Source: Klebsormidium nitens
Lineage: Eukaryota > Plantae > Klebsormidiophyceae
Assembly (NCBI GenBank): GCA_000708835.1
Contig: DF237044.1
Span: forward strand, 1 to 64,000
Length of the DNA: 64,000 nucleotides
Direction of reading: 5' to 3'
Each line of letters starts with the position of its first letter. Position 1 is the stretch's first letter. Under the pieces are notes generated by a model. It had not been told where the DNA came from. It did no database searches and worked only from the letters and a program-made list of their open reading frames with translations. Position numbers and translations under genes: made by a program. Positions 1,105-63,200 of this stretch are shown piece after piece.

Positions 1105-4100
1105 TCAAGCCTTGACGTTCTCAGAATCCTTTTCAGTTTGTTCCTTGTAGTGCCGTATCACGTCTGCTTCCATGGCCTCGAAGGTCGCACAGAACCCTTC
1201 GGCATCCCGAACTTCGTGTGAGAACGAGAATCGGAACTCGCCCCATTCCCCCTCGTTCTTTCCCATATTCGATCCGGTTTCGAGCGTGACAGGTGTCCCT
1301 ATTTCAGCCGGGTCGATGCTTATGGACCGTTGTACTAAACAGGTGAAGCCCCACCTGTCGATGGACAGGACATATGCATCCTGCAAACATGAACGACGGC
1401 GGGTTAGCACTTGTTGGAGGGCGTACTTAGAAGAGCAAGGTGTCTGACGTATTCGAGTGGGCAAGCATAGAAGATGAGGTGACTTCAGTATGAAGGAGTG
1501 CACAGAACCGATCAATTGGCACACATTGGAGCAAAACGTAGTTCGCAGATTGCGTGCTTCGAAATTCGTTTGGGGCTAGAAAACCTCAAAAAGAATTGAC
1601 GAAAGCGACGGGAGTTCGCAAACCAACGAGATTGTCTGCATAAGACATGCCTGTCGGAAAACGGAGCTTAAATTGTCAGATCGAATCTGCGCATGTGCCA
1701 GCGCCCAAATGCTCGTGAAAGGACCCGAAGTACTACTGCGGCGTGTAAGGAGCGTCTTCTGCATCATTCAAACCACTTCCAGACTGCTCTCGTATAGTCG
1801 TTCACCACATCTGAACGACCGCGCTCCAGTCATACTCGATGTCGGGTGCAGACTGTCGCCCCCCCGATCCCCAAGTTCTTCTTCACTCCAATTGGCATCG
1901 TTGCACGATTGTGAACAGAAACTCGAACATTCAGCGCTCTCCAAATTGCGTCCGTGGTTCTGCCTCTGCAGACCCGTTAGCACCGGCTCGCGGTGGTAAA
2001 ACGTCCTTTAGATCAGCCCCCAAAAGTGTGCCATACAAACTCACCCGAGCTTCGACTTGCATGTACGCTGCAGCGAAGAGGATGAGCCGCTTCCGAGTGC
2101 CTTGGTCCCGGTTGAGTGCGTCGATCAGCGGAACTGAGACGAGCGCTGCACGCGGAAAGTGATGGCGAACCAGCAACATGGAGCTTTGAGGTATGAATCT
2201 CAAAACCGTGTTGAACTGACCGATAGGAAACCATGGAAATCAGAAACTGTTCCTGAAGAAAAGTCGTGAAAATTCAGCGGATGTGTAGGTGCTTCAAGAC
2301 TCCGCAACCCTCAATAGTGCCAGTCTTTGTGGACGGATGGCGTCTTGGCGGACATTCTTTCGCGAACGGATATAAGCTTCAGCTCACATGAAATCCCGGT
2401 ACTCCGAACCAAGCACAGCAATGAGATGGGGAAACAAGGCGTCGCTCCGTCCCGTTCAGATCAAACCTTCGTCAAACTGCTCGAGTGAACGACTTCCTTT
2501 CAATGACACGAAAGAAAAAGCAGGCCCAAGTCGATTCTCACCCAGAGGGTCCGTCAGCGCCCCCTGGAACTCCTCCGCAGTCCCCGACTTCCTTTCCCCG
2601 GCCACGTCCATGTACGTCCACTCCTTGGGCTCCAGTCTGTAGGCCCTCAGTTCACTCGCCCCGGCCATCGCCTCAAGCGCTTTCTGCCGGGCGTCGGCGG
2701 TCGGCCCGACGGTGTCGAGAAGCGCTTTCGCTTTCGGGCCCGCCCGCTCGACCGCGGACAGTGCGCGCGCGGACAGCTTCCGGACACGCTTGCGCCAGTA
2801 CTCGGCCTGCGGGAGCATAGGCGGTGAGAAGATGGCATAAGCGATGGGTAGATAGCATAAGAAATGGGCAGCGAATGAGAGTGAGGAGGACAGCGCGCGC
2901 ATGGATAGCTTTCATACGCGCTTGCGCCAGTATTCGGCCTGCGGGAGCGGAAGCGATGGGCGAGGCATAAGATATGTGAGGTGACGACGGTAAAAGACAG
3001 GGCTGCTGTATGCGCTTGTCCAAAGCATTGGCCTCCGTGAGGGTAAGTGATTTGAAGAGACGCACAAGCAACATGCAGAGGATGAGAGTAAAGAAGGACA
3101 GCGTGCATGGGTAGCTTCGGGACACGCTTGTGACAGTCCCCGGCCTGCGGGAGCACAAGCGATGAGTGGGGCATAAGGGATGCAGAACGACATTGATAGC
3201 GCGCGCGGGGATAGCTTCTGGAAGCGCTTGTGCCAGTACTCGGCCTGCAGGATCGAAAGCGATGGGTGAGGCGTAAGAGATCTGAAAAGAAAGGCGGTTA
3301 GGTTGCACGTCGACCGAAAACCTACTTCGCCTCCAGCGTTGCCTTTGTAGTACCGACAAGTAGGAGGTACGGTATTTCTATGCCATTTTACTCCTCTGGT
3401 ATGTACCCTCGGTAAGCATGTGGATCTAAAAGCCATCCGATTGGCTAAGAAATCCGGAAAGCTTTTTGCAGCTTTTTGGTCAACGCGCACCCTAAGACAA
3501 TAGCGGACGCGATCGTGCCAGTACTCAATTGGCGGGAGCACAAGTGATCCGTGGCTCATGAAGATGTGATCAGGTAGACACAAGCGATGCCCAAACTCGC
3601 ACATCGCTCAAGAGGACGACGCCTGCGCAACATCCAGACCCGCCTATACCCGCGATCGGCCAGGAAGCTTGGGACTTGATTGATAAGGATAGGCGACTCT
3701 TCCGCAGCAGTGCAAGAACACTTACACACTGGAGTTCGAGGCAATAGCAGAGTTTCAAACGCCCTTGCGCCAGTTGCAGCAGGACATAGTCGAAAATGAA
3801 GCATCAACCCTGTGCTAATCTCGACATCAGCCGTGGTCGAACTAGGCAGAATGAACCAGACGACAGCAAAACCCTTTCGTATTCGACGTGTGTAGGCTCC
3901 TCTGTGTCCAAACCGACCAGAGAAGTAGAGCTATGAATACTCGAGCATTTTGCATTGCGGATTTTCTCCCTTAACCCTTCACCATATTCTTCTTAAGGTC
4001 GTTAGGGTCCTGAACAAAGAGGCTCTGGAATATCTTATTGCATAGCTCCTGACGTTCAAAAGAACGGCCTTGCAACGACAAACTTCACATGAGCCCCCAT

Positions 4101-6026: not shown

Positions 6027-7433
6027 TTGCTTGCGTGCCCCGGTCGCACCACCAATCTATGTTGGTGGCCCTCTCACAACGAGCTCAGACTGCTACAGCA
6101 GCTAACGACGATAATCACCTAAATGCTGTCATTGAAAAGGAGGCACCATTCTGCTCCCTGGTGCTTTAGCTCATGTGGTTGCTGATTAAAAGGAGGTACG
6201 TGCTCTGCTCTTTGCAGCTTGCTGCATGCGAACTCAAAGCCAAAATGGGGTCCTCTTTCGCCTTTGTCCAGCTGCCTTGCGCCAGCACAGAATTGAAACC
6301 CTGAGGTTTAATCTATACTAGTTAGTACCTAAAACCGTTCCGCCGAACCCAGTGACACTGTCAGTGTGACTTGTCAACGCCTCAAAGGAACGATGTTGAG
6401 TCGCTCAGAATCGTTCATGCTCCGACTCTTATTGATATGGAACCGTTCGATGTGTCTGTCACGACTTAGCTGGGGAACTGACAAATGGTGAGCTGCCGCC
6501 ACGTCAGCACTTGCATTGGCGCCGTTTTGCAACTAGCATGACCTGCAATTCAAACTCGATAGTCAACTGCGGCGCCAGGCTCATTGCAGTGCAAAATTCA
6601 ATGCAAAGGCATGCTGGAGAAATTCCTGCAGCCTGCAGGGAAGAAGGTTGGTCTCAGGCGCCTCTGAAGTTTGGTTCTTTGAAAATTGCATGGTGGCGCT
6701 AAGATTAAATTAGATCCAAAGTAGACGACCTGTTCGTTGGCCAGCTTAGTACTTCACTTCTGAATCTTAGCAAGTTTGTGGCGTCCTAGGTTAGATTTGG
6801 AAATCCTCTGGAGGCTGATTCGAGGTGTCTTTTTGGGTAGGGTGCCAGTATTAGAAGACCTAGATCTTACTTCTGGAACACATGTAATTGACAAAGTCCA
6901 GCAAGGCTTGAAGTTGGGCTTCACAAGTTCATATGTCAGAGCACAAGTGTGTTGAATTTTGGCCTTCATCTGTGGGTCTACAAGGTTGAGATCTCTGGCA
7001 GATATCCTAGACCCCCCAAGTCAGGGAAAACTATAGGACATGCGACTTCTTTGACCTTTCAGATCGTGTGACTTTCTAGGTAGCCACAAACTTACCGGGC
7101 GGGCTTAGCTTGTTTCCCACCTTCCGCATACAATCACCTTTGCACGGTCTCTTTGTAGCCACTTGATGGTGGGATCTGCTTCAGTGCAAGCTGTTACTTC
7201 AGAGCGCTGAAGTAGCAGGCTTTTCAAGGCAGGCATTCAACAAGACGGAGGCACTGAACTTCGATACTTAGCTTCTCGAAGAGGTGTAGACAGGCTGAGC
7301 GGAGGGGAGTGTTTCACAAGAGCAAGCCCTATATCAAGCGGACACCAGAGATCAGGCCCCCAGCATTGCCCATGTTTGGGGCACAGCCTCCTCTGCAAGG
7401 GTGGTTTGCAAGTTAGGGTTTGGTGGCTCGACA

Positions 7434-10400
7434 ATGAAGCTGAAGCTGTCGCCCAGCATGCGGCGTATCACGATCACTGCACAGGAGGACTTCCATCCGA
7501 TGGGCCTGAAAAGCGCCCCCGCCTGCTGTTCCTACAGCTGCGTGATGGTCAGCCTTTTAGGGTTAGCGCTCATCCTGCCTATGCTCTTCATCACCACGGC
7601 AATTGTCAAGCTAGACAGCATCGACAACTGTATAGACGGAGGTAAGATTGGTGGAGTCAATTCTTTTTGTCCATGTTTTATCTGCATCTTCCAAGGTGTT
7701 GATATGGTTCTTCCTGCTCGTGTCGAGCTTGAGTAGGCAAAAGGCATAACCACCTTGTTGTCTTTGTTGAGTCTCCGTAGGGTCAGGTATCAACAACCAT
7801 AGTTTCTGGGTCAGGTATCAACAACCATAATTTCTGATGACAGGTTTTCGTGGTTGACCAAATCAGTCTCGCCAACTTTTTCTTGTAACGTAGCTTCCTT
7901 GTGTGTTGGTAAGGGCTGATGAAAGTAGTCAACACGCTTTAGTAAACTACGGTAGTTCCTCACAGTTCTTTGTGGACAAGTGTTTCTCAACCAGGTCTCA
8001 TCAGTGGCCGCATGCTGTGTCAGGGGTCTGTGTTGTTATAGTCCTGGTTATCTGTGAGAATCTCCCAAATTCACAGTCTGGAACACCGTTGCAAACTGCG
8101 GCTTTGAACTCCCTCTTGAGTCAGCTTCTCTTTCTGGTAAAGTATTAATCAACAAACCTTTCTGACTTTGTTCGTCCAATGATCGCTGCGCGGCACCCGT
8201 CGTTTCTGGTTCGCAGACAACCAGCTTGCTGACTGACATATCGAAAGTGCCAGAGTTCTTTCCTACATACCAGTGCATTGGAATCGATGTGTCATGCTGC
8301 TCACACATAGTTGGAATCAGACTCGTTGTATCAGAATTGTTCTTTATGTTGTTGTTATGTTGATGTGTCAAACGGGTTGTGATAGAGTATTCGCGCTTGG
8401 GGAGCAAACAAGTTCCTAGCGGAGGTAGATTTGGTAGTGGCACGCTTCTGAATCCGTTAAGAAACTGACTTATAGACTTTTTTCTCACACAACACCGATC
8501 GTCCTTCACAGAATATTACACTTGCAGAGACTCAGTACTAACACCGATGAAAGACTTTCCCCACCAATACATCACTTTCGTTTGCAGAATGTTACACGCG
8601 CGGAAGGAAGATGTCCCCAACGGACCGAGCGGACGAGCTCGTTACCGGACTCCTAGATGTTCCCGTTAGTGTCGGACGGCAACTCAACGAAGAGCGGACG
8701 GGCGTGGGGGGAGATGCGGTTGTCGGGGAAAGAGAAGAGACGATCGACGACCTGATTGCGCAAGTTTCGGAGCTGAACGATGACAGCGCGAGCGTGATCC
8801 TGAAACTCCGAGCTTTGGTAAGACATGACCGCTTGAATCCGCTTTTGCTGGTCCAATCAAGGTTTGTGGAAGCAATCAAGCCGGTTCAGTGTTCCTTAAA
8901 CAGGGCTCCCCTTTCCATTCTCGGCCTGTTTCTAGAGTTGTGAAAGATACGGTCTCTCCTACCTGTTAGACCTTCGTTGATGTAACCAAAAGGGGGAGTG
9001 CATCAATATTCAAGAGCTCACTGAAGAGCAGGCTGACTAAGTAGCTCCTACAGACTAGGTAGCGCTTACAGGTTGTACCGTTGACTGATCAGATGCGAAT
9101 CCTGATCTTCTCTGAATCCTTCAGTACCCTGGGTAGCCTTCTCTCAGTTACGAAAGTCAATTGCGCATGTTCGCACGCACTCATTCGTTGCTTCTCACCC
9201 GATTGTCCAGATTGAGTTTTGAATCTTTAAGAAAAATCCTTGACTTAAAAAGCGCAAAGTTCAGACCCCTGCAAAGTTCGTTTGCGAATAGGTCGACTTG
9301 CAGAAAGGCAAAGCGCACATTGCCGCTCTCTGCTGTAATTGATCTTTCTCCGCATTTTGTACATCATCTGGCATAGGCACCGAAACCCTGGACCCTAGGT
9401 CTGTTGATCCTAGAGTTTTGCGATCTCCGGAGATTGAGGTGCATAAGGGCACGCCGTTCGCTGTTCTTTGTGTAATTCGATTTCGAGGTCACCGTCACCC
9501 TAAACAACTGAATCTAGAGTCCATAACTTGAGGTCCAACAACGGTTTATTTTAACCTGATGAATCCTGCAATCTCTTCGGGTTGAGTGCATGAGAGGGCA
9601 GGTGCGAACTCTGTGTGCCGCCGGTTTTTCTCGCAGCATCTTTGGTTCTTGTGAGTTTAATCACCAGAACCCTCAGAACTCTGGGAATTTCCGCAGGTCG
9701 AGGTGCACGAGGGCAAGGCGCACATGGCCGCTCCTCCTGTTTTTACTCGTTTGTCTTCGCTTCCTTCGGCCACCATTATTCGAAATCTGAGATCTCAAAA
9801 CTTCAAACTCTGCTTCTAGACCCTTGAACCTCATGGAACCCTTCGCTTTCCTTAGGTCGAGGTGCACGAGAGTAAAGGCGCTCGTGGCTGCTCGCTTGTT
9901 CTCTATGTTCTCTGTTCTTTAGTTCTCCGCTTTTCTGTTCAACGTAACTCCAAAACTTGGTGCCTATCTTTGTACTTTCACTGCTTCTGTGGATACCAAT
10001 AAGACAACCCTAAACTCACTGCCAGGTCGAGGTCCACGAGGGCAAGGCGCGCATGGGTCCTCGCTCTGTTCTTCAATCATCGGCTCTCCGCTTCTCTTGT
10101 CAACCGTACCCTAAACTTTCAGAACCTAGTATCAGTTATAACATGTCCAGTGACTATAATAGACATCACTTTTTGACTAATCTACACTTTCCGCAGGTTG
10201 AGGTGCACGAAGGAAAAGCGCGCATGGCCAAGCTGCAGCGTGCGCTGTACCGACACTTCGCCTCGAAAGGCGTCCCCAAGGGCCTGCACTGCCTCTCGCT
10301 GCGGTTAACGGCTGACTACAGCACCAACCCCGAAGCTAACCGCCCGCTTGCGGGGCCCGAGGAGATATCCCGGCTGACCGACAACTCGCTGCGCCACTTC

Positions 10401-13400
10401 GTGCTGCTGTCAGACAATGTGCTGGCAACTAGTGTGGTGGTTAATTCGACGGTAAGCATGTTGCGAAGCTTCGATGATGACACCCGTATGCTCGATGGTT
10501 GGACGACTTAAAGATTTGTGCAGGGAGCTTTGTAAAACTTCGTATCGTAGCCTCGAGTCTGTTGCTTATCAGGTCGAGGCTTGTCGCAGGAAAGACAATC
10601 ATTGGGCCTTTCGAGAGCTCGCTATTTTCAATCACAAGCACCTGCATATTCAGAAGAAATCAAGGACGACAATTTGTCGAGAATTGTCTTTAGTGCCTTC
10701 AGAACTTCGACCCGTCTTTGAAGTGAGAAGCTGAGTCTCGTTGGAGCAAACTATTGAACAGTTCACTTTGCTTTTTTGAATGCGACCTGCGCATACATAT
10801 GAGCACCGGCAACGAGTATCCCGACTACAGTATCAGAGATGAATAGGCTCGTGAACGAACGACACGCGTCACAATTCGCAGGTGACAAATGCCAAGGAGC
10901 CCGAGAAAGTCGTCTTCCACGTAGTAACGGACGAGACGACGTATAGCGCGATGCATGCTTGGTTTGCCTTGTTCCCTCCGGAGCCGGTGAGTTTCAGGAC
11001 TCGCTCGGGAAGAAGCGAGCGTTATCACGACCGCGAAAAATATGAATCTTCGGAAGGGGCTCAGAAGTGCGTAGTGCAGATCTGAGGACGTCCCACAGAA
11101 AGACGTCTCATGCTTTTCCAGTTCTCCACATAAGAAGTGGTTTTGAGAGCGCTCAGTGCGGGCCAAGAATTGATTTAGAAAGCGTTGCATCATTACCTGG
11201 TATAGTTTGAACGGCCGAGATAGATTCCGAAATGTGTGTGCTTCTCAGCACGCTTGAAGTCACTTGGACCATGAGTGGCGACCTTCTCTGGTACTGCCTT
11301 TCCGAAAGCTGTGAAATGCAGACAGCAATTTTGACATTTTGATTGACACGAAGCTCTCTGATGAGACTCGTTTGAAGAGCGGATCATCTGTAGATACGCT
11401 CCTTGTCCAGAAAGGCAGAACCAGGAAGTGAAGCTTTGTTCTGGCCGCACCCGCTCACGGTACGGGTCTCCGGTGCGAGCTTCACATTGGTAATTAGACT
11501 CTGATTCGTAAGATACAAGTGTGAGACGAAAACCCGATTCTCAAATTGTTTTCTGATTCCACTCGACGATCAAGGTGCGCAGCGTGCACGAGATGCAGTG
11601 GCTGATGGCACTCAAGGCGCCCGTGCTGGACCTCGGTTTATCGACCCTGAAAAGTTGGTTCAGATAACCCAAAACCGTCCTTCACCCACCTCGTCGTCTT
11701 CTCTTAGGCAAGGATTGAAGTGCGCCGCGTCCACGAGATGCATTGGCTGAAGGCAGCCAAGGTGCCCGTGCAAGAACATAACTCTTTGACCCTGAAACTT
11801 AGGTCGGGCTAACCCATATCTTCCTTAATTCACATCTTCGTTCGTTCTCAGGCCACGATCAAGGTGTGCGGCGTTTCACGAGATGCAGTGGCTGAGGGTG
11901 CTCAGTCTTTCCGAAACCAAAATTGACATTGCGATTTCCACTTCGTGGATTGGTTCCCTAATTCTGAGGATGCAATCATGAAACTGGTAACCCAATCTCT
12001 AAACCATTTGTTTTTCCAGGCGACGATCGAGGTGCGCGGCGTGCACGAGATGCAGTGGCTGACTGCGGCGAAGGCGCCCGTGCTGGACCTGATGGAAAAC
12101 TCACTCGCGCTGCAAAAGCTCAACTACGGGGACCGGATCTTAGAGGAGGCCGCGAACGATCCACCGCAGGTGAGCCATCCATCATCCTCAGAAAGTGGCA
12201 GCTTTTGGACAGTCGTAGGATAGTCATTCTGGTTTAGGAGTCTTGGGGTGTCAGCGCCGCTCATGTCGGCTCTCAACGCTTTGAAAGCCTATGCCCTGGG
12301 GACGGTTTCTTCAAAGAGAGGCCTCCGCAAAGTCGCGGTCAGCATGATGTCGGTTTGAGATTTGAGCCTTCCAATGGCTGCAAGCCCTTGCCCATAAGAA
12401 CTCACCTGCGAGCCTCGACTCAAGCAAACCCGGTTATGGCAAGCTCAGTCCTCCCTTCAGTCAACCTGACCACAAACTTAGGTACTTTGCTTAAAGTCTG
12501 TTGCCAAACGCACTCAACCACTTGAAGATTTTGGCAGCGAAGTCCCAAGCGCGTAGCCCCAAGTTCGTCTCAATCATGAACCCTCAACGACTTTCAAATG
12601 AAGCATTCTCCGCTTCCCCTAGCCCACCATGCATTCAGTTTCCGACTCGTGGCCTCGATCTCAGCGAAGAGTTCTGAACTTTCATCCCCAAAATAAGTTC
12701 ATCGCTATACTAGTTACTGGCGGCGAAGCTGAGGTTGGGAGCCCCAAGTTTGAACCACCTGGGACCTTTGTTTTCAGCGTAACCCGTTTCTCGCCAAACC
12801 TAAAATCCACGTTCGATTGATAATTCAAACCTGACCAGCAGCTCGGTCCAGTCTGCCTGATTCCACTTCTCAAACATTTTTGACACCTTTTCAGGTGCTA
12901 GCGGCCAAGCTGCAGGCGTGCAGCCCTAAGTACATTCCCATCTCCAATCCCTTCGAATCAAGCAAACCCCGTTTCCCCCAGCTCCAACCCAACTACAATC
13001 AATGCTTGACCTTTTCTCTCAAAGGTAGCGTCTGAGATTCTAACCCCAAACATACCAACCGCAGTTGACCATTAATCAACCGCTTCTAACCACCCTTAAC
13101 CGGTTTTTTCAGGTGCTGGCCGCAAAGCTGCAGGCGCGCAGCCCCAAGTACATCTCCATCATGAACCACTTGCGGATGTACCTGCCCGAGGTGTTCCCCG
13201 AGCTGGACCGCATCATCTTCCTGGATGATGACGTCGTCGTGCAAAAGGACCTCACCGGCCTTTGGGAGATGGACATGCGCGGGAAGGTGAGGGCGCAAGT
13301 TTTGGAACGCTTGACGTCTTGAACCCGTTAAACCACCTGACGGTTTTGGATCTTTGTCGGAATACTTTACGTTCTTGAGACCTGCGGGATTCTTGACGTT

Positions 13401-15383
13401 CTTGCATCTGCGAGATGATTGGACGAGTGAGGCTCCGACGTTGAATTGGAGGAATCAAGCAGCTCTGTAGTTGTAGACAGGGCACGACGATCTGACCGGA
13501 AGTACACTGCAAGGGCAAGGTCGGTTGTGCGCTCGTTCTGGGCTGTTGCCGTGTCGAGATTCGGCTCAGCTCCAAGTCTTTGATCTCAAGCTTACTTTGA
13601 GCTCTTTACGCTGCATGACCATCCTCATCGCTGGAAAGCACCTTGACGTTTTAACCGCCGAAGGACTGTTACAGACCTGTGCGTCGATTTTTGAAACTTT
13701 AATAAGATTCACATGATGTATTTTTTGAGAGTTTGAGAAGATTCATATGATGCATGCTCTGAAGCGGGGCCAGCCGAGGGGAGGCGTTGGAAGTAGGTAC
13801 TGGCGTGTTACATGTTCGAAAGTTTCAGGAGCTTCTTCAATGCGAGGTGAACTGTGCGGTTTACTGTTAAGCCGGTGCTCCCCGTCCTGAGCAACCTCCC
13901 GATTAAGCCTTTCCATCAAATTCTCTCCTTTCCTGTACTCGGAATCGCAGTCTCTCTCGACCGATCATGCATTTTTATCGATGTTCACCCGCGCCCCTTG
14001 GAGATTGGCAGAGGATCACTAGCAGATTGTTTCCCACTAGCAGATTGTGGAAACAGAGATCATTTTCACGTCATCGTGTGCTAGGGATCAAAGTTTGGGG
14101 GTCTTCTGCTTCTTTTACTCTCGCAAAGAGTAACAAATCGTTTCGCGCTACTGACCGAGACTGTCTGCGCCAATCCTGAGCAGGTAAATGCGGGCGTCGA
14201 AACCTGCCGGGGGGCCGACCGCTTCGCTCTCAGCAAGCAGTTCCGGTCGTACTTCAACTTCTCGAACCCCCTCATTGCGGAGCACTTTGCGCCCGAGACG
14301 TGCGCCTGGGCGTTCGGCCTGAACGTGTTTGACCTCAAGCGCTGGCGGGAGTCCAACATCACCGAGACGTATCACCACTGGCAAAAACAGGTGAGGCGCA
14401 GGCTTCTCTGGACTTTGCCCACGTGTCTTTGTTTGGCGTCTGAAGGACAGTATCTGTGGAGGGGCTGCTTTGTCTGAACATTCGACCCTCAGGAGGCTCC
14501 CGAGTCTGACCGCACCGAAACATAACCCCGCTGGGAAAAGCAGGTTAGGTGCATATTTTCATGACTTTGCAAGCGTATTTTTCCTTGAGTGTTTCCTTTC
14601 TTTGGCTTGTGAAGGCATTCCTCCCTCGGAGGATCTTCTTTGCTTGAATGTTCTGACACGTAGGAGGCTCCCGAGATCGACACACGGAAGTTTACCACCG
14701 CTGGTAAACTAAGGTGAGGCGCACCTGTTGCGCGCAGTCAGATATTGCCGCCGAACCTCCAAGCAGTCTTTTTTAGCTGCAAGAGGCGTGGTGGCTGAGG
14801 CAGGGTTTTCAATGTGCTGGTGGAAAATTGTAAGCGTACCCTGGGTATTTCTGTTCCGACTTGATGGATGTTGCTTGAAGGGTTCTTAAAGTCCAAACGG
14901 AACGGATATTCTGACCCTTACACGCTTTCTTCCAGCTGTTCATGCAGCTCGAGAATGCTCGTCTTTCTGGGCTGTTGCCATTCGATAATGGAACGTGATT
15001 CGAGGGCAGCGACTGTATAGCCAGCGAGGAATCAGATGTCCGGCTTTTCTGATGGACTCGTAGGCTTCTGCTGACATCAGCCCGTTCCTTTGCAGAACAT
15101 GATGTTGAACATGACGCTCTGGCGGCTCGGAACGCTTCCGCCCGCCCTGATAGCGTTCTACGGTCACACCCTCCCGCTAGATCATAGTTGGCACATGTTA
15201 GGTCTTGGGTATCAGCCCGATAGCAGTATAGAGGTCATTAAGTCGTCAGCGGTAATCCACTACAACGGTCCTGCAAAGCCATGGTTAGACATGGCTTTCA
15301 CGGATTTTCGGTCGTATTGGACTAGATGGGTGGATTACGGTAATGAGTTCGTCCACCAATGTAATATTTTCCAAATGAGATGA
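7434..15383 (+). CDS. GAUT: Galacturonosyltransferase (GT8), GAUT12/13/14/15-like, about 538 aa, 8 exons
   Basis: Exons 7434-7641, 8588-8817, 10197-10451, 10882-10986, 12020-12169, 13113-13286, 14184-14390 and 15096-15383 are all GT-AG and phase-consistent. The protein has an [16 protein letters not shown]-terminus plus TM anchor, [38 protein letters not shown] (DxD), [22 protein letters not shown] and HYNGPAKPW. Confidence 0.95.
9690..10230 (+). repeat. Acceptor-junction echo array in GAUT intron 2
   Basis: The motif ag|gtcgaggtgcacgagggcaaggcg recurs with exon-like starts at 9697, 9856 and 10026 before the true exon at 10197. A fainter copy lies near 9430. Confidence 0.9.
11560..12095 (+). 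repeat. Acceptor-junction echo array in GAUT intron 4
   Basis: Copies of (ag|)gcgacgatcgaggtgcgcggcgtgcacgagatgcagtggctg start at 11563, 11708 and 11852; the true exon starts at 12020. Confidence 0.92.
12520..13165 (+). repeat. Acceptor-junction echo array in GAUT intron 5
   Basis: Copies of ag|gtgctggccgcaaagctgcaggcgcgcagccccaagtac start at 12528, 12714 and 12895; the true exon starts at 13113. Confidence 0.85.
14335..14725 (+). repeat. Donor-junction echo array in GAUT intron 7
   Basis: The exon end ...accgagacgtatcaccactggcaaaaacag|gtgaggcgca (true donor 14391) is echoed with donor-like GT at 14544 (gttaggtgca) and 14714 (gtgaggcgca). Confidence 0.75.
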
Positions 15384-29014: not shown

Positions 29015-33108
<4,094 letters not shown>

Positions 33109-37300: not shown

Positions 37301-39996
37301 GCAAAGCCAAAACCTTACCTGCCCTTTGGGCAAGAACGAATTGTACGCCTTTCGACACCTGACCATACCCGCCCCCGTCTGCGCCCCCACGCGCGGCCGC
37401 AGCGCTACCAACCGCGTCCTCCGTTTCCTCAACCTTTCATCCTCCTCTCTCCGCCAACTTCGGACGCCGGTTCCGCCAGCTGTCAGCGGAATCTTACGGA
37501 CGTCCGGGAGCGGGCGGAAGGGCCAGCGCACGGCGTATGCCCGCCGGCTTATGGACTGCAGCTGGTGGCGAAACGCGGTCTGCTTGCGCTCCCACTCGCG
37601 CTGCTCCTCGCGCGCGACGCGCGTCACCAGCGAAAGCACCTTGCTGACGTCGGCGCTGCGCGTGCTGACGTCACCGCTCTTCCTGCTGTCGCTCTCTTGA
37701 TCTCGACTGGTGTCGCATCTCGTAGGTTCGACCGAAGGGGGTTCGGCGGAAGAGTACGGGGGACACGTTGCTTGGAAGTGCTTGCTAGGGTGTGGCTGTA
37801 CACGACCCCGACTCATAAGGTCTGAGTGGATTCTAGCATATGAGCTTGGTCCTTGAATCGGGCACCGACTGCGTTTGCCAGGCTCAGAACTCGACGAAGA
37901 AGTGTCTGCAGAATCGGACCCTGTTTCCGCCCCATCTGAAGCTGGATGATGTACCGATTCTTCTTCTGAAGAGTCCGTATTCATCTCTTCCGAATTGAGT
38001 CTTGGCCCACGGTCCTTGCGTGTACTCGTATGCCGCCCTTTCTGAGGATCCGACGTGCTTTCTCTTTGTAGCTTCCGACCCGCATTTCTTCTCCACACAG
38101 CAGAAGCCTCAACCTGAGTACTGGAGTCAGACCCACTGCTTTCCGTTTCCCAGTGCTCAGACGCTTCTACCTCAGTGACCTGGCCAGAAGAAACTCTCGG
38201 CTCCTCTCCACCTCCCCTCTTCGACGAACGTGTACGGTATGATTCTCTTCCCATCCTGTCCACGCGGTCCCCTCTCGTCTGATACTTCTTCTTTTCGCCT
38301 GTTGCCTCGAGCCTTCGCTTAGGGATTGCTACGATAAGCTCCAAAAGACTAGCAATATGCTCTTGGTCTCCAAAAACGATCCTCTCTGCCTTGACATGCG
38401 ATAAGTCGAGCTCAAGAAACTTCGCCGCCTCTTGGATCTGCAAAACAGTTGGTGTTCGATCAGTGGAACTTCGAGAGTCTGCTCGGCAAAGAAACATAAG
38501 TTGCGAGTTTTGGCGTTTTGTGCATAAAGTCCTACGAAATCTGAAAACTCGATTTCAAGCCTAAGACAGATTTGTGACGCACCATCATGATATGTTGAAC
38601 ACAATCTTTGTCAGAAATGGTCTTGGCTTTCAGTTGTCTTAGAGTTGCATGTTCTGGAGAAAATACACTCTTTTGAACCGCTCGGTGGAGGGTAAACTTG
38701 TCGTCAGGTGTTTGATAAAGCGCGTCCCTTAACCAAGTTTCTTCACATAGTGCTCTGCATGTTTTGCGACTTCCCTTTGCTTGGTATATTCTCATTAGGG
38801 CTGTCCATGTGTATCGTAGTAGTTGATCGTTCGCCATCCTCCTGCCTCTTTCTAAGCAAGCAAGCCTGCCAATCACACTCTTCAGTTCTGTTCAAATCTT
38901 TCACCAATACAGTTGCGACCAACTCGATAACTTGCTTAATCAAGATTGTCAGTCACAAAGAGGAACACTTACCACACTGGCACAGTTTCCTACTCTATCC
39001 GCAGAGCTCTTTGGGGACTGCTGAAGGCCCGCTATTCTCAGCCCCGTTAGCTGCTCGAAGGCTGCCACAAACACAGAGGTACTGGAGCAGATTGCCACGA
39101 CGTCGTCCACAGTTTGGGCCTGCAGAAGTGGGAGCAGCTCACGGGATTGAATCGGAAAGCGCAGGTGTGTTGAATTGAGTCCATCAATGTTCCAGGGCAG
39201 GAGTATTGATTGTTGAGGTTTGGACAGTTCTCCTCTGGTCAGGACCATGTTGGCATTCAGCAACTTAGCTAGTTGGGGAAGGTGTGGACTTTGTGCGAGT
39301 CTGACTTATGGCAGTAAGCTGGAGGCCCCAATCTTTGGACAAGGGTCAGCGCCTGTATCTTCAAGAGAGTCCACTTGACCACATTGAAAAGATAGGGAAC
39401 TTCCAGCTCACTGCCCGGTTAATCAGGGGCTGCGAAAGTTAGGCCCCCAATCTACACCAGCTAATACTCGGCTTGGAATTTACCTTCATCAGCCCCTTGA
39501 TTCACCATTTGTCCGGCCAAACTCTCATTCATTTTGTTACAAAGACTTACAAGATCCCAGGTACTTATTTTGGAACAGAGCAAGCCATTTGCATTTATAT
39601 TTCGATGAATTGCAATCACCAACTAGATTGTGCCCAGCTGTATCTAGGTCCAAAACCTTCTTTCAAGTTTCCTGAATCATTCCCCGCCCATACGAGCTGA
39701 CATGCTGAAGCTGTGCAGATATATGTTCTTGAGTACAAGCTGCAATGCTCTACAGGATCTCCATTTTCCAGCTCTCTCGACAGCCTGTGGTTCAAAGGGA
39801 GGTTTGGCAAGTCAGCTTCGTCTGAGTTGCTTACGCCTCTGAGACGTGACACTCCTGATAAGCAATCAGTCGGGGGTTTGTTGCTCACCTTTGCAACCAA
39901 ACCCGCTGCGGCCATCATCATGTTGCACAATGCAACTAGTTCTGCGCCATCAAGAGTGCTGCCACCTCCCTCGAAGTATGCATGATGCTTCGCCAT
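34359..39996 (-). CDS. CEP95: CEP95-like centrosomal coiled-coil protein
   Basis: Exons 39996-39889, 39119-38973, a long exon from 38437, several middle exons and a last exon 34448-34359. The N-terminal region AELVALCNMMM...CSSTSVFVAAFEQLTG...LELDLSHVKAERIVFGDQEHIASLLEL resembles CEP95 [22 protein letters not shown]. The C-terminal coiled coil reads ALALERESILAQRKKERE...ERAQEQ|VMRQLAREER. Some middle junctions are unresolved. Confidence 0.7.
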
Positions 39997-41296: not shown

Positions 41297-48840
<7,544 letters not shown>

Positions 48841-50626: not shown

Positions 50627-51242
50627 AATCCGCTCACGTGTGCAAGTTATATGCCTCCTCTTTTTGCAGCGCCTTTTTGCTTCACATCTTCTACTGAGCG
50701 TTTGCTTTTGTTCAATTCAAAAGTCTCGGCCTCTACAACGGCGGCCGCGTAATTCCAGCCGCTGCCGGTTCACTTCAGTCAGGGTTTTGAGAGTTCGTCA
50801 TTTGGGCGCGCGACCTGTCAGCGCGCGGCCGCCTCTTAACCAGATTCATCACCTCACACGGGGCGTAGACTGCTTAACGGACTGCATGCGCACGGGTTTG
50901 GTGAAAACCCGACCGCGCGGCCGCTCCACTGGATTGCAGGGCTTGTTCGTGCATGTGATCTCGCAGCAGAAGCATTGCGAAGCTGGACATTAGCCTACTA
51001 ACCAAAGAGCAGATTGAAAACTACTCTTCTTGTGCTCCATTGCAAGGGCTTTCCATGGTTGCATGCTCGCGTGCATACTTCCTTGGCAGCAGCATCTCAA
51101 CGGAGGTTTCCAAGAGTCTTCTAAGTTTGGACTCCTCGAAAGTTGTACGTTTGAAAGGAGACGAACACTTTTGTAAGACGGATACCTCAGCTTTGAATAG
51201 TGCTGGATAATTCAGGAAGGGCAGGAGCGGAAAGCAGGCAGA

Positions 51243-54200: not shown

Positions 54201-57200
54201 ACGGGGGACGTATTACAACCACCTAGCACCGAGTATTTCTCTGGTTCATTGCGCTGCAGATTCAATCCGTCAGTGTGCCTGATCAGTTTCTCATCTTCCT
54301 GTCATGATTACCCTGGACTCTTGGCCAGTTCTTGGCATCGTACAGTGCAACCGTTCTTGGGGTTACTCTTACCGGAATATATTTGTACCACAACTTAATC
54401 TCGCTACAGATAAACTTCAACACGAAGCAGCTGTTGAAATTGTTCCTAGAGCCGACTTTAGTCAGATCCTAAATGGGGAATTTGCTGCCCCACCTTGCGC
54501 TTTTGCGTATCTGTCTTCGGGTCTTCTATTGGGCCCCTTTGTAACCCAGAATTTCTGGCGTTTCCGAGGCTTGCACAACACCGGACCAGTCGCCTATTGC
54601 TGTGACCGTGTGGTCAGCATCGCGGCGACGTCGGTTGCGCCGCTTTTTACGGACTTCTGTGGACGCCGGAAAACCACGTGCTGACGTACACCGAAGCCTG
54701 CTCTACACAGGGGCAGTCGCCTTGCGAGGTGATCGCAACGTCATTCTTTTGCGTGCCATGCTGACGTCAGCCTCACGATGTCTGACGCATGATGCTGCCT
54801 GCGTAAGAAGCTCGAAGTCGAGTTGCCTTAACAAAGCCGCTACTTAAAAACTCTATGTAATGGCAGTGTTGTCTAAGGCACGGACGGGCGATGAGTGGCA
54901 GACCGCGTTGCAACTTGCAACAGTCTCTAGGACCCATATACCTTGCCGAGCCCGTTTGGATGATGTGGAGATCGAGTAGAGAAAATTGTACTGTACGGGG
55001 CAGAAACAATGCAAGGGCTACGCATGACGAACTTCGCAGAACGCTTCTTGTTCTGAACGGCAGCTAACCCCATGTATGATATCTTTTCACTCTGGATTCT
55101 GTGGGACAGCTTGTGTTCAGTCAGGCTGTAAGCTTTCGAATGAAGCTTACTATTTGGTGCTAACAAAGGAGCATGTTGCTCGTTTCGCTCGCCGGCAAAA
55201 TCGCGGCAAGTATCCTTGGCTGTCAAAGACTGAAAGGACGCAACGACTCTCAGAGTATTTGCCTTGGCCTACTTTTGAGCGCTCTAGCCTCACTCGATGA
55301 GCGTCTCTGTAAGTATGTCAATTCATTCCTTTGCTGTCTGCTTCCCCTGATCTTGAGAGGACGATGAACTTCTGGAAAGCTTGCTTCGAAGAAGTCGCGG
55401 GGTAGCCTACCTCGATCAGAAGCATTTGATCCGCGTGCGCCGTTTGCATTGCGCACTTCCTTCGACTGCCCCCACGCATCAAACGCGCCTTCGTTGTTGT
55501 CTTGCTTTGAGTGCTTTCGTCCGAGACAGCAGAGACATGTGCTTTTCCCGCCCGCTTCCAGTCGAAAGACGTCAATCTTGGCTTGCTAGCTGCTCTTTCA
55601 TGAATCTGTTCGACACATTCTCAGATATGGTTCATAAAATACTAGGCCGCACTGAGGATCCGCGCACGTCTGAAACTGCAGCATGCTAACAAAGCTATCG
55701 GATATTCTTTTCTTCTGACGTTTGTGAGGGCAATGATACTCTGGCCATATGGGTCTCATGCAAGTACCCAGGCCCTGTTCTTTTTCACGAGAGCCGTTGC
55801 AATTCGTGAAGGGATTGATATGGCTGTGTGGGTCTCATATACCCAGGCCACGTCGTTCAGAGGAGAGCCGTTCTAATTTCGGTCGCTTGAATGTAGAGCA
55901 CAAAGTGCCGACTGCAGCGCGGCAGAGCTTTGCAGATCCCTGCTGCGGTCAGGTTCTGAAGTCAAATCTGATTACCATCGTCATCATGCATGCTTAAGAA
56001 AAGCTTTAAGGTCCTGAGCTTGGGTCGGATTCAAATACTGCGTCTTTGTTGTAAGTTCGCAAGATTCCGAGATTCCTCAGAGCAGAGAGGATGATTACGT
56101 GTCTGAGGTGCTACCATTCAGAGACCAAATTTGAACCCTGAGTAATATATCTTAATATATCTTGCAAGCATCTGACAATGCGTTTTTGGAGGAATAACAA
56201 AAACAATGACTTCAGAAAACCTCTGAAAATGCGTAGTTGAGTTTGGGGTTTTAAGAACGCACGTCTGGAGTGCAAACAATCTTTCTCTGCTTAAATTTTG
56301 ACGTCCCCGAGCCTTGCTTTTGGTTGATTCACCACCAAGTGGCAGAGAAGACGGACTAGAATGGGTCTGATGGCCCACTTTGTGTTGATCACGTGAGCCT
56401 CTTGGAGTCTTCTTTACACCTTGTTTGCATGCTGACGGACCGAGAAGGTCAAATCCAAACGGTCTGATTCAGGACGAGATCAGGTTTACTTCGCTGCAGC
56501 TTTAGACTTCTACGCTCCACTGTACGAGCTAGAATCTATTCAACGGGATTCATAAGCTGTCACTTGATTACCAGCAGTCAGAACAACATCCTCATCCTTT
56601 TCTTTGCATCGAAGTAACGTCAGACAGTAGATAATGAACGCGTTCTGATGGAAAAACTAACCTGTATTCAGCGCGTCCTGACCAACCGTGATGTGTCATT
56701 ATCACCTCGTCACAGCAGCGCTTCGGCACGCAGACGTGCAGTTCTTGTGGTGCTATCCCAGGCCAGACTTTGAGGGCCTAATCAATCCTGCAGTCCCCGT
56801 TCTGTTTTCAACTTTGGTGGTTAAATTCCAGGGGCTGCTTTGCGATTCCGAACGTCCGGCAGCAGCAAAGCCGCCCGCGCTGCACCGCGTGAGTCGCCTT
56901 GAAGGGTGACCGCCTGCTCAAATCTCGTGGCGAGCGTCTTGGCGCCTATCCGACTTTTCTGAAATATCGAAGGCCATTTGCAACTACTGCACCGCGCCTC
57001 TGTTTGGAGTTGCTCTGTATTTCAGGTGAACAGCAAGTACTTTGATAGTGCTTTGACGATTCCATGCGCTCGATTTACTATCCTTGGTGGGAGCACTTCT
57101 TAAGTCCTTCGCCTACGCGGCACTTTTGAATTGACGGTAGACGTTGGGCTCGATTGATAAGGTGTTCGTTGGACCTTTGGACGTCATGGGCAAGCCAGGC

Positions 57201-60200: not shown

Positions 60201-63200
60201 AAGCTTGGCCCGTGAGTATCATAGCCACAGATTCGTCTCTGACCGGCCAAGAGCGTTCTATGGACGCACACGACGAAACATATCAGAGTGTTTGGGCTGC
60301 CGGAAGGAGGAACAAGTTCGTGTCTCCTTGCCTTATTCAGTTGAGCTTGAGGAAAGGCTAAGAAGTTATGAACCTGGAAGCCAAGCTTCCAGTGTTGAGG
60401 GAGCATTTTCGGAGCCCTATAACTTCAACTCTTCAAATCAGCAGAATTCATGCGGAGATGCAATATTAGTTTCTTACGTCCGTGGAGTGGACGAACGCCC
60501 CAAATATCCAAGAACCCACACTAGTTCCCTTGATTAAATCGCCATGAGCTTTGCTGGCAGCTAGTGGTATATATACGTCAAAGCAGTACTATTTGGCCTG
60601 GAAGCCCTCTTCGAACAGGCCGGGCTGTTTTCAGAATCGCCTGCGAACGAGCCACTCAGGCGCTGGATACAGTGTGATCGGGACTCTGTGTCTGTGTTTA
60701 AGTATGCGCCTCGCTGAAAACGTCTATCTCAAAGTTCGGGAGGAATCACGTATGTACTGGGGGATGGTGGTTCATTCAGAAGAGACGCACCTCCCATTTG
60801 TCAGCCTAATTTGTACCGCTTTCTAGCTCAGCTCACGATTTCGAGTCCTTTTAATCTTAGACTTTAATACCTCGATTTCGGAGAAAGCAATGAAATTGCA
60901 AAGCGCGCGGGCTTTCAGTGCCCAGAAGCGTCAACGTTGCTAAAAGTTGAGCCACTGTTGACGAATGGGCTATTACTGTTCCCAGTCATCGAGCTTGTCA
61001 GGAACCTGGTTTCGGGAAAGCGCTCGGAAACCGTGATGTGCAGACACTATGAAACCTGTTGAACCAAAGCGTCTTCAGATAGGCATGTTGTCCCTGTCGC
61101 TCACCATGTCGTGTTAGGTATCACATTTTTGGAGCCAATGCGCCCTGAGTGTTACAGTACTAGTTACGGGAAGCTTCATAGCCCCGGAACAGCATCTTTT
61201 TCGTGTGAAAAAGAAGCGCAAGAATCCGGCTGCGGTTGGTCGCCCATGCATGAGATTGTAGCAACCAGGGCCTGGATGCAGTCCCAGGTCTGAAAACCCG
61301 TTCAAGTGTTGCGGATCGAGATGTTGACAGTGCATAAATAGGCTCCTGGCAGCAGACAGATCCTGCTGGGTCGTACCGATATCGTCGTGTGTCTAAGCGG
61401 GCGCAGTCAAACCAGCCTTTCTTGTACACACTCTCTACTCGATCGAGCTCTGGCCTAGAGAATCGGAGGCTATTCTCACTAGTCAGATCATTTCATGAAT
61501 AGATATCATTCCAAGGGCAAGGAGGAGAGCTACTCCCGCAGCTGGGCCCATTGTCTGCTCATCGAAAGCGTGCGTTCAATCCTGAAGCTCTCAAAATTAT
61601 CCCTAGGAAGACCCTTGACTGCTACGCAGGTTCCCCGCGAGTATTGCAAGGATTCAGGAACCAATTGCTGCAACCGCCAAAGATAACCTTCTGATGTCTT
61701 TTCTCGAGTTCAATCCATATCGGTGCTGACGCCTGGCCCTTAGAAAAGGGGTATCAGTTTCTGCAGACGATTCAAACCTGCCACGTGGCATCAGCTTTTT
61801 CACGACTTGTGCGTGGACAGCAATTCTTCGTCCGGCACAGTCTGCAAGTGGAAGACATTTTGTCAGGGTTCCAAGCTGTGCTAGAGCCCTGTGCCTCCTC
61901 TTATCTTTCCTAGTCTTCGCTTTGGGCTTTACTCCGCTAAGGCCTTTGCAGGAGGGTGCAATTGGCTGCGCGGCTGATGCCTGATTCATCCCCGGGAATG
62001 CTCCGAGTCAGTTCTCAAACACACGCGATTTTTGTTTCAACTTTCTACCAGTTCCTTTCAGCACATCTCGCAGCAGGTTCCCAAAAACTAAGTAGAATTC
62101 ATTCAAACGAAGGATTCGCCGGTAGGTGCTATCAATATAATGGTCCTATTGGTACGTAAGAACCCTCGGCCCTCATGATCAAAACGTTTCTTTGTAAACA
62201 TCCACTCCTCCGTTCCACCTTTGTTCCGTCTTCTGCTGCGGTAATTCAGACAACAATGAATGCTTCGGCATTGGGGCGCCCTCCAATCTCAAACCCGATC
62301 TTTGAACACGTGTCTGTTCTAAACGAACGGCTCTCCTGGGCAGAGATACCTACAAACTTCCTCTCCAAAGACTTTTACTTTCATCCGTTCCGCTGCGATT
62401 ATCCAAAGCGGCGCCAATCTGCACATGCAAGATTGCTCATCATTTTGCATGAAAGAAAGCGAAAGTCTGAGACTTCGGGCATGCGTACTCATTTCTCTCC
62501 GAGCGGCGATCCGTTCTGCTGCAGCTCCGGTCTTCAATTATCTGCCAAACGCTGCAAGAGACTGGCTTCTGGTTTGGAGCTTCTGTTGATGCTGTTGACC
62601 TGTTGCATCCCTCGGGTTCAAGGTTCTTATTCCGCGATCGATCCGCTCGTTCCGCTCGTTCCGCTGTAGCTCCCGGATCACTGCCATGGCACGAAAGGCG
62701 GCTCCGACGGAGCGAAGCTAGAACAAACACGTTGCAATTTGAATAGTTCCGTCCTGATTCCGTCCTTTCGCTGTTGTTTCGCTGCAGCTTTTCGACCATG
62801 GCCACGGCAAGAGGACGGCATCCAGCGCATTTTGTACTATCTGCACTGCTCTTCACACAAAAATGTTGTGCGCGGTGTATCATGTCACACTTCCGCTAAG
62901 GCTCCGCTCTGATCTCCGCTCGTTCCGCTGCAGCTCCCCGACTACGGCCACTGCAAGAAGGCGGAATCCGGCGCGGAGCTTCTGTTCTGAATCTGTTTGG
63001 GCCAACTAACACCGCAAGTCAGGTATCCAAAGATACAACCGATGTACTCAGTCTTTTCCGCTTTACTGATTCCGCTCGTTCCACTGCAGCTCCCCGACTA
63101 CGGCCACTGCAAGAAGGCGGAATCCGGCGCGGAGCTGCTGTTCCACGCGGACGCGGAGGTGAATTGCCTGGCCATCTGGAACGAAGCGGCGGGAAAGCTC

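What the first reader, a model, noticed from the sequence alone, without database searches (positions are those of the whole stretch)
2761..63150. Window-wide 'splice-junction echo' system: introns carry tandem, decaying copies of their own exon boundaries
Seen directly: in four unrelated genes (unknown gene, GAUT, DAHPS, YHS), ten exon boundaries are accompanied on the intron side by 2-4 tandem copies of splice site plus 25-70 nt of adjacent exon. Both acceptor-side (7) and donor-side (3) arrays occur, on both strands. No comparable arrays were spotted in the FtsH or GLR-like genes. Inference: repeated local duplication anchored on exon-intron junctions. The copy that keeps the full exon stays functional, older copies are pushed into the intron, and the intron grows. 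Recurrence at the same junction suggests a directed mechanism or a mutational hotspot. It also raises the question of how the spliceosome ignores near-perfect decoy sites. I know of no description of this as a genome-wide intron-expansion process, but that needs a literature check.
Basis: partly seen in the sequence, partly recalled or inferred. Interest (0 to 1): 0.92.

Follow-up and report, generated by a model that had tools for sequence, protein, structure and literature searches.

The report
Splice-junction copy arrays inside introns
In this green alga, many introns are padded with rows of worn, unused copies of their own exon edge plus splice site. This looks like a by-product of local DNA duplication that enlarges introns, not a control device, and no paper I found describes it on this scale.

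Summary
Ten exon-intron junctions (7 acceptor, 3 donor, both strands, four genes) each carry 2-4 intronic copies of the splice site plus 28-97 nt of exon. Median spacing is 156 nt. An eleventh array, with the same 145-nt spacing, spans a stop codon rather than a splice site.

RNA contigs fix the DAHPS junctions. They show only the authentic sites in use and confirm the arrays independently of the assembly. Junction-derived arrays make up 33% of the DNA of 12 validated introns. Two related algae carry arrays too, partly at the same junctions and partly at others.

A directed mechanism is not shown. Exon-derived cores stay 75-96% identical to the real exon, while the intron-derived spacers have decayed to noise. 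That implies gene conversion or re-copying from the real exon. With the cores masked, 9 of 10 arrays disappear from my scan, so purely intronic duplications of the same age would be invisible. Counting visible arrays therefore cannot decide whether junctions are favoured.

Single-locus precedents exist (human F7 intron 7 VNTR, potato RdRp). I found no genome-scale description. The scan has already reported this phenomenon many times elsewhere in this genome (183 notes).

The parts
2756..3559 (-). A1: acceptor-side array of the unknown gene. The real exon starts at 2806; decoy acceptors lie at 2938, 3144, 3244 and 3529 (spacing 132, 206, 100, 285).
   Evidence: three of the four decoys keep an intact ..cag| acceptor
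9290..10233 (+). A2: GAUT acceptor-side array. The real exon starts at 10197; decoys lie at 10026, 9856, 9697 and (weak) 9292.
   Evidence: real junction supported by tblastn of GAUT homologues; probe score 32 against a null maximum of 15
11501..12090 (+). A3: GAUT acceptor-side array. The real exon starts at 12020; decoys lie at 11852, 11708 and 11563 (spacing 168, 144, 145).
   Evidence: probe score 60
12415..13171 (+). A4: GAUT acceptor-side array. The real exon starts at 13113; decoys lie at 12895, 12714 and 12528. It is also present in relative B.
   Evidence: probe score 42
14348..14723 (+). A6: GAUT donor-side array. The real intron starts at 14391; echo donors lie at 14544 and 14714.
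   Evidence: probe score 33
44323..44667 (+). A8: DAHPS intron 2 donor-side array. The real intron starts at 44351; echoes lie at 44520 and 44663. It is the only array whose spacers are still detectable on their own.
   Evidence: RNA junction 44349->45442; relative B also has two echoes here
45036..45500 (+). A9: DAHPS intron 2 acceptor-side array. The real exon starts at 45443; decoys lie at 45246, 45136 and 45057.
   Evidence: RNA junction; probe score 56; relative A has an echo at the same junction
46188..46511 (+). A10: DAHPS intron 4 donor-side array. The real intron starts at 46235; echoes lie at 46369 and 46492, and both keep GTGAGG.
   Evidence: RNA junction; probe score 35
47242..47675 (+). 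A12: DAHPS intron 4 acceptor-side array. The real exon starts at 47579; decoys lie at 47421 and 47277. The first 48 nt after the decoy at 47421 are identical to the real exon.
   Evidence: RNA junction
62552..63143 (+). A14: acceptor-side array of the terminal exon of an unnamed gene. The real exon starts at 63090; decoys lie at 62934 (96% core), 62788 and 62670.
   Evidence: orthologous ORFs; relative A has one decoy 60 nt upstream of the same junction
63238..63499 (+). A15: two copies at 145-nt spacing spanning the stop codon (TGA at about 63288) of the same terminal exon. The second copy lies in the 3' untranslated region, so this is not a splice junction.
   Evidence: the stop position is matched by P0272, and relative A's ORF reads through the only GT candidate; absent in relative A

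Best explanation
These are non-functional tandem arrays that lengthen introns.

1. Origin. A local tandem duplication of roughly 60-290 nt (half of the spacings fall between 143 and 171 nt) happens to straddle the edge of a coding segment: an acceptor, a donor, or in one case the stop codon. It is tolerated because the outermost authentic site still gives the normal mRNA or protein, while the extra copy lands in the intron or the 3' untranslated region.
2. Copy number. Once two copies exist, copy number drifts up and down by unequal exchange. This part is inferred.
3. Visibility. The intron-derived part of each unit decays to noise. The exon-derived core stays recognisable because its master copy, the real exon, is held by selection and is repeatedly copied onto the decoys. 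I infer gene conversion; core-only re-copying is not excluded.
4. Consequence. Arrays at coding edges therefore stay visible far longer than duplications lying wholly in non-coding DNA. This accounts for much, perhaps all, of the apparent anchoring on junctions.
5. Decoys. The main transcripts do not use the decoy sites. If used, almost all would give a frameshift or a premature stop.
For: Structure:
- Head-to-tail units with a splice site plus exon edge at ten junctions.
- Spacers are significantly alike in about half of adjacent unit pairs, which shows that whole units were duplicated.
- Intron length differences between relatives match whole periods: 191 nt against a 170-nt period in GAUT intron f, and 263 nt against a 247-nt period in a neighbouring gene.

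Use of sites:
- Only the authentic junctions appear in spliced contigs of three RNA runs.
- 27 of 29 decoys would give a frameshift or a premature stop.

Not splice-specific:
- An array with the same 145-nt period spans a stop codon.

Core maintenance:
- Cores are 61-96% identical and spacers 49-65%. For A14, A12, A3, A9 and the intron-e decoy of relative B, the core is 84-96% identical while the spacer is at or near the shuffled null: p about 0.5 for the four window pairs, p=0.017 for relative B.
- The same junctions carry arrays in species that differ at 35-47% of fourfold sites.

Visibility bias:
- Masking the cores leaves 1 of 10 arrays detectable.
- A faint excess of similarity at lags of 90-260 nt exists outside the arrays (p=0.0036), and there are two weak purely non-coding duplicates.

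Precedents:
- F7 intron 7 (PMC1557585) and potato RdRp (PMC4974935).
- Small tandem duplications can arise at staggered breaks (PMC8355091).
Against: - No fresh whole-unit duplication (core and spacer both near-identical) is present in this window, so the founding event is inferred and not seen.
- The tight mode of spacings near 145-170 nt, and its recurrence in three species, is not explained by random breakpoints.
- Among validated introns, all 8 arrays of this size class are at junctions and none is interior. After allowing for visibility, about 2.4 interior arrays were expected (Poisson P about 0.09), so a real junction bias is not excluded.
- Arrays cluster in some genes and are absent from others such as FtsH.
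- Decoys keep AG/GT in 25 of 29 cases, more than uniform decay would leave.
- Contig-level RNA data cannot exclude rare decoy use, especially if those transcripts are degraded.
Confidence: 0.55

Rival explanations
1. A junction- or coding-edge-directed mutational hotspot. Some feature of exon edges repeatedly causes breaks or template switches there and writes a copy of the edge about one nucleosome length into the intron. Candidate features are positioned nucleosomes, paused polymerase or replication conflicts, and R-loop borders. On this view the anchoring is mutational and not a survivorship effect.
For: - All 8 arrays in validated introns are at junctions and none is interior.
- Spacings cluster at 143-171 nt in the window and at 137-182 nt in relatives.
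- The same junctions carry arrays in different species, once with a quite different period (60 against 118-156 nt), which suggests independent events at one junction.
- The youngest-looking copies share only the core and not the spacer, which fits core-only templated copying.
Against: - With cores masked, 9 of 10 arrays vanish, so the interior-versus-junction count is heavily biased. The corrected test is not significant (P about 0.09).
- The junction sits at very variable positions within the unit, with exon parts of 28-97 nt.
- One array spans a stop codon.
- About half of adjacent pairs do share spacers, and length differences between species equal whole periods.
- Overlap of array-bearing junctions between species can equally come from shared ancestry.
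Confidence: 0.27
2. The arrays are functional. Decoy sites could act in splicing control: regulated unproductive splicing coupled to decay, stepwise (recursive) removal of long introns, or recruitment platforms for splicing factors. Selection would then keep their cores and splice dinucleotides intact.
For: - 25 of 29 decoys keep AG/GT, and cores are far better preserved than spacers.
- Three acceptor arrays have AG|GT decoys that could in principle act as recursive sites.
- Arrays at the same junctions occur in diverged species.
Against: - No decoy junction appears in spliced contigs of three RNA runs. The one apparent decoy joint (46232->47419) is an ambiguous placement inside 48 identical bases, and depth after that decoy equals the intron background.
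- Four of seven acceptor arrays lack the GT needed for recursive splicing.
- Presence or absence and copy number vary freely between close relatives.
- Decoy reading frames are broken.
- Core preservation is explained by copying from a constrained master.
Confidence: 0.06
3. Assembly or annotation artefact. The arrays would be collapsed or expanded repeats, or the 'real' junctions would be mis-assigned.
For: For two of the four genes the junctions rest on ORF and codon-bias evidence only.
Against: - Unspliced RNA contigs from three independent studies and a bisulfite DNA contig run through the DAHPS arrays colinearly with zero mismatches.
- The copies are diverged, so there is nothing for an assembler to confuse.
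- Similar arrays occur in independently assembled contigs of two relatives.
Confidence: 0.01

Closest known systems
[quoted passage not shown]
   Same: It is a head-to-tail array whose terminal unit contains the authentic splice site, so the real donor is followed by a row of intact pseudo-donors that stay silent. Selection of the most upstream donor by 5'->3' scanning offers a ready explanation for why donor-side echoes are ignored here.
   Different: It is a single locus with a 37-bp unit, donor side only, and is a polymorphic VNTR of near-identical units. Here the units are about 60-290 nt and diverged, occur on both the acceptor and donor sides, and sit at a third of the junctions of some genes and across the genome. 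Scanning does not explain why upstream acceptor decoys are skipped.
Potato RdRp tandem duplication of an intron 3' side plus exon 5' side (PMC4974935), and the tandem-duplication models of intron gain (Rogers 1989; Hellsten 2011; Gao and Lynch 2009, as reviewed in PMC3443670)
   Same: The duplicated segment is the same kind: intron tail with branch site, pyrimidine tract and AG, plus the start of the exon. The splicing signals are inherited from the parent junction.
   Different: In potato the upstream exon copy stays in the mRNA and a new intron is created. Here no new exon or intron arises and an existing, conserved intron simply grows. The classic AGGT model is not met: the introns are shared with relatives and their ends are not copies of the opposite exon edge.
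Tandemly duplicated (mutually exclusive) exons
   Same: Intronic copies of a neighbouring exon sit next to the original.
   Different: Those copies are whole exons with both splice sites and an open frame, and they are used alternatively. Here only 28-97 nt of one exon edge with one splice site is copied, the frames are broken, and none is seen in mRNA.
Introner elements and other transposon-derived introns (PMC9860276)
   Same: Both add intron DNA on a genomic scale.
   Different: Introners are dispersed families with copies in many genes. Here each array is derived from its own gene's junction, and the window has essentially no dispersed repeats (1 distant direct hit).

Membership tests
Boundary-spanning intronic tandem array (F7 intron 7 type) | Head-to-tail repeats, with the terminal repeat containing the authentic exon-intron boundary | tested here: met
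   Ten arrays. The terminal copy coincides with RNA-defined or homology-defined junctions.
Boundary-spanning intronic tandem array (F7 intron 7 type) | Pseudo-sites are intact in sequence but silent in normal transcripts | tested here: met
   25 of 29 decoys keep AG/GT. Only authentic joints appear in spliced contigs for the four DAHPS arrays. Rare use is not excluded, because contigs drop rare forms.
Boundary-spanning intronic tandem array (F7 intron 7 type) | Copy number varies between individuals or lineages | tested here: met
   Between species only: arrays are gained, lost or differ in unit number in relatives A and B. Variation within the species was not testable.
Intron gain by tandem duplication of an AGGT-containing exon segment (Rogers model) | The intron is new (absent in relatives), and its two ends are copies of the flanking exon sequence around one AGGT | tested here: not met
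   The same introns exist in relatives A and B, and intron positions are shared with distant GAUT homologues. Only 3 of 7 acceptor junctions are AG|GT.
Mutually exclusive or tandemly duplicated exons | Full-length exon copies with both splice sites and an intact frame, used alternatively | tested here: not met
   The copies hold only one exon edge. 27 of 29 would give a frameshift or premature stop. None appears in mRNA contigs.
Introner or transposon-derived intron sequence | Dispersed copies in unrelated genes, with terminal repeats or target-site duplications | tested here: not met
   There are 36 near hits against 1 distant direct hit and 2 inverted hits in 64 kb. Each array matches only its own junction.
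Recursive splice sites | An intronic acceptor immediately followed by a regenerated donor (AG|GT), used as a splicing intermediate | tested here: inconclusive
   AG|GT is present in the decoys of A2, A4 and A12 only and absent in A1, A3, A9 and A14. Intermediates cannot be seen in contig data.

The most novel reading that the evidence does not exclude
An active, edge-directed copying process operates genome-wide in this algal lineage. It would be tied to chromatin phasing or to transcription and splicing at exon edges. It repeatedly writes a copy of the exon edge plus splice site into the adjacent intron at about one nucleosome length, and keeps re-copying it. If so, intron growth here is driven by a specific mutational mechanism and not by random duplication.
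Probability: 0.22. Interest if true: 0.85.

Novelty: new variant of a known kind. Interest (0 to 1): 0.6.

Why it matters
How introns grow is poorly documented. Most work concerns intron gain and loss or transposon insertion. Here about a third of the intron DNA of two ordinary housekeeping genes is visibly derived from their own junctions, and related species show that the process is ongoing. That makes local duplication a measurable route of intron expansion.

The arrays are also natural experiments in splice-site choice. Rows of intact acceptors or donors, each with its own exon context, are skipped. This could be used to test scanning and exon-definition rules in a close algal relative of land plants.

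The contrast between preserved cores and decayed spacers gives a built-in read-out of gene conversion between an exon and nearby non-coding copies.

There is also a practical caution. Counting visible arrays overstates junction specificity, because only copies with a selected master stay visible.

Tried and rejected
- Tandem Repeats Finder misses almost all arrays because the units are too diverged. A near-diagonal self-BLAST, calibrated against far-diagonal hits, was used instead.
- I first argued that purely intronic duplications of similar age would have been detected, giving a binomial P of about 1e-4 for junction anchoring. I withdrew this after masking the cores showed that 9 of 10 arrays depend on them.
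- DNA run X33, chosen as a possible divergent relative, turned out to be bisulfite-converted DNA of the same organism and gave no comparative information.
- The apparent use of a decoy acceptor (joint 46232->47419 in two runs) is an ambiguous placement within 48 identical bases.
- The metagenome scan for GAUT relatives returned only organisms with tiny introns. These were useful for exon positions only.
- Synteny with relative A ends at 52.2 kb, so it could not be used directly for the 62-63 kb arrays. An orthologue was found by protein search instead.
- Pfam gave no family for the unknown gene or for the 63-kb exon, so the 'YHS' label is not supported there.
- A test of whether spacer similarity differs between real-decoy and decoy-decoy pairs showed no clear difference.
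- Gao and Lynch 2009 could not be read because it is not held.
- One look-up on relative A's contig failed because there was no exact product on record.


Full report
**What is there.** The window is GC-balanced eukaryotic DNA with spliced genes. Tandem Repeats Finder sees little, but a self-comparison shows that almost every repeat in the window is local and direct. There are 36 direct hits within 1 kb, against one distant direct hit and two inverted hits. With a more sensitive setting, and using far-diagonal hits as the chance control, 61 near-diagonal hits reach score 16 where 0.7 are expected. They form 15 clusters. Three are short-period repeats: a 33-mer x8 at 46845-47109, a 34-nt repeat at 13688 and a 55-nt repeat at 36857. 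One is a weak non-coding pair at 54564/54691. The other eleven are arrays with spacings of 79-285 nt (one gap of 405), median 156, with half between 143 and 171.

**Junctions.** For DAHPS, spliced RNA contigs from three runs of different studies give the exon structure. After shifting each cut to GT..AG it reads: exon ..43315-43467, intron 43468-44225, exon 44226-44350, intron 44351-45442, exon 45443-45578, intron 45579-46093, exon 46094-46234, intron 46235-47578, exon 47579-47905, intron 47906-48636. For GAUT, tblastn with full-length homologues places exons at 10197-10451, 10882-10986, 12020-12169, 13113-13286, 14184-14390 and 15096 onward. In every array, the one copy that is contiguous with the exon sits exactly at such a junction.

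This gives seven acceptor-side arrays (real exon starts at 2806 on the minus strand, 10197, 12020, 13113, 45443, 47579, 63090) and three donor-side arrays (real intron starts at 14391, 44351, 46235), each with 2-4 extra copies. The copied exon part is 28-97 nt. A probe test on 24 validated junctions is sharply bimodal. Eight have echo scores of 32-65 against a null maximum of 16, and sixteen are at the null level. Junction-derived arrays occupy 4.05 of 12.4 kb (33%) of these twelve introns. Without their arrays those introns would be about 360-580 nt, like the array-free ones.

**Not an artefact, and not used.** Unspliced contigs from the RNA runs and a bisulfite DNA contig run through the DAHPS arrays colinearly. 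The only joints seen are the authentic ones. A joint 46232->47419 in two runs has only 26 bases on that side, inside a 48-base stretch that is identical between the decoy and the real exon. Depth after the decoy equals the intron background, so this is an ambiguous placement. If decoys were used, 27 of 29 would give a frameshift or a premature stop, so rare use followed by decay cannot be excluded from contig data.

**An eleventh array that is not a splice junction.** At 63238-63353 and 63383-63499 (spacing 145, 78% identity), the duplicated unit holds the last codons, the stop codon and the start of the 3' untranslated region of the terminal exon. The stop is supported by a 92%-identical ORF that ends at the same residues. 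It is also supported by relative A's orthologue, whose ORF reads through the only GT that could have been a donor. So the common denominator of all eleven arrays is the edge of a coding segment, not the splice site as such.

**Relatives.** I recovered two related genomes:
- Relative A is a JGI metagenome contig that is syntenic with window 38.9-52.2 kb and differs from it at 47% of fourfold sites.
- Relative B is a 22.5-kb Logan contig that is colinear with window 13.1-44.4 kb and differs at 35% of fourfold sites.

Introns are at the same positions in both, but their sequence is mostly unalignable. Echoes are distributed as follows:
- Window and relative B share echoes at GAUT intron d acceptor, GAUT intron f donor (weak in B) and DAHPS intron 2 donor.
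- Relative B alone has them at GAUT intron e donor and acceptor (two decoys, core 91% identical), and in an intron of a neighbouring gene that is 584 nt long against 321 nt in the window, with a period of 247.
- Window and relative A share them at DAHPS intron 2 acceptor, DAHPS intron 4 acceptor (weak in A), and the 63-kb acceptor, where A has a single decoy only 60 nt upstream.
- Relative A alone has one at DAHPS intron 5 donor.

Arrays are therefore a feature of the clade. They can persist at a junction for a long time, and they also come and go.

**Mechanistic clues.** About half of adjacent unit pairs have spacers more alike than shuffled controls. The length differences between species equal whole periods. 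Together these show that whole units were duplicated head to tail.

The parts of a unit do not age together, however. Exon-derived cores are 61-96% identical, while intron-derived spacers are 49-65% identical and often indistinguishable from shuffled sequence. The best-preserved cores have spacers at or close to the null:
- A14: 75/78 matches.
- A12: 58/62 matches.
- A3: 41/46 matches.
- A9: 69/82 matches.
- Relative B, intron e: 93/102 matches.

For the four window pairs the spacer p is about 0.5, and for relative B it is 0.017. A recent whole-unit duplication would leave both parts nearly identical. An old one without further exchange would leave the decoy core far more diverged than observed, because the decoy itself evolves freely. 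I therefore infer repeated copying from the real exon edge onto the decoys. Gene conversion is the likeliest route, with the tract limited to the part that is still similar. Core-only templated re-copying cannot be excluded.

**Is the process anchored on junctions?** In the validated introns all eight arrays of this size class are at junctions and none is interior. Taken at face value this looks highly significant, since junction-spanning positions are only about 30% of the tolerated target. But when the cores are masked and the scan is repeated, only one of the ten junction arrays (A8) is still found. Purely intronic duplications of the same age would therefore be invisible. Scaled to that single spacer-detectable array, about 2.4 interior arrays are expected and none is seen (P about 0.09).

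Outside the arrays there is a faint but significant excess of similarity at lags of 90-260 nt compared with 400-570 nt (p=0.0036). There are also two weak non-coding pairs at 54564 (127-nt spacing) and 55742 (79-nt spacing). It needs fresh events.

Three things remain unexplained by the neutral account: the tight mode of spacings near 145-170 nt in three species, the clustering in some genes, and the high retention of AG/GT in decoys (25 of 29).

**Comparison with what is known.** The closest precedent is the human F7 intron 7 minisatellite. Its first 37-bp element spans the exon-intron boundary, so the real donor is followed by intact silent pseudo-donors, and the most upstream donor is chosen by 5'->3' scanning (PMC1557585). 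A tandem duplication of an intron 3' side plus exon 5' side is documented in a potato RdRp gene, where it created a new intron (PMC4974935). Tandem duplication is an accepted route of intron gain (PMC3443670), and small tandem duplications can arise at staggered breaks (PMC8355091).

The case here differs in several ways. Existing, conserved introns are lengthened and no new intron is created. Both sides of introns are affected. Units are about 150 nt and diverged. The phenomenon is frequent. Seven searches of the held literature found no description of this at genome scale or in this group of algae. Gao and Lynch 2009 could not be read.

**Relation to the rest of the scan.** Earlier notes report the same phenomenon in many other windows of this genome (183 notes mention it) and name the organism as Klebsormidium nitens. 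I did not verify the species name. The best named protein hit is from another streptophyte alga, Closterium. My results agree with those notes on the reality of the arrays, the unit size, the non-use of decoys and their presence in relatives. I qualify the statement that arrays sit at junctions far more often than random duplication would give, because the visibility bias measured here was not taken into account.

**Verdict.** The arrays are most likely neutral products of local duplication, kept visible by concerted evolution with the real exon. A junction-directed mechanism remains possible at roughly one chance in four.

Noticed in passing
window 46812-47141: There is a 33-nt minisatellite with about 8-9 near-identical copies (95-98%) inside DAHPS intron 4. 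It lies between the donor-side and acceptor-side echo arrays, is purely intronic and is unrelated to the junction sequence.
   Followed up: partly
window about 19.9-29.0 kb, against relative B (L084) 6172-7143: The window has about 9 kb between two blocks that are only about 1 kb apart in relative B. This is a lineage-specific insertion or deletion between the GAUT-side genes and FtsH; its content was not examined.
   Followed up: no
window 43000-48632 (run X33): A run listed as DNA of the same species label is bisulfite-converted. Hundreds of C (or G) positions across this region read as T (or A) in its contigs (540 listed), which suggests little cytosine methylation over the DAHPS gene body.
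   Followed up: no
window 9697-10233: All three close decoys of the GAUT exon at 10197 agree with one another on G/C-ending codons (GTC, GAG, GGC, AAG) where the real exon has A/T-ending ones. The decoys may preserve an older state of the exon.
   Followed up: no
L087 9049-9897 (relative A): A five- to six-copy array with a period of about 146-156 nt sits in another gene of relative A. This shows the same unit size elsewhere in that genome.
   Followed up: no
window 54564-54735 and 55742-55872: Two weak local direct repeats (spacing 127 and 79 nt, about 71% identity) lie in a stretch with no recognisable coding signal. They are candidates for purely non-coding duplications.
   Followed up: partly
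window 52226 onward, against L002/L003: Synteny with relative A stops just after the YHS-domain exon at 52.08-52.22 kb. The orthologue of the 63-kb gene lies on a different contig of that metagenome.
   Followed up: partly
window 37642-37688: A 21-nt repeat (2.2 copies) lies within the span of a 1.2-kb minus-strand ORF. In the same region the neighbouring coiled-coil-like gene shows weak internal coding repeats at 34777-34950 and 35749-35937.
   Followed up: no
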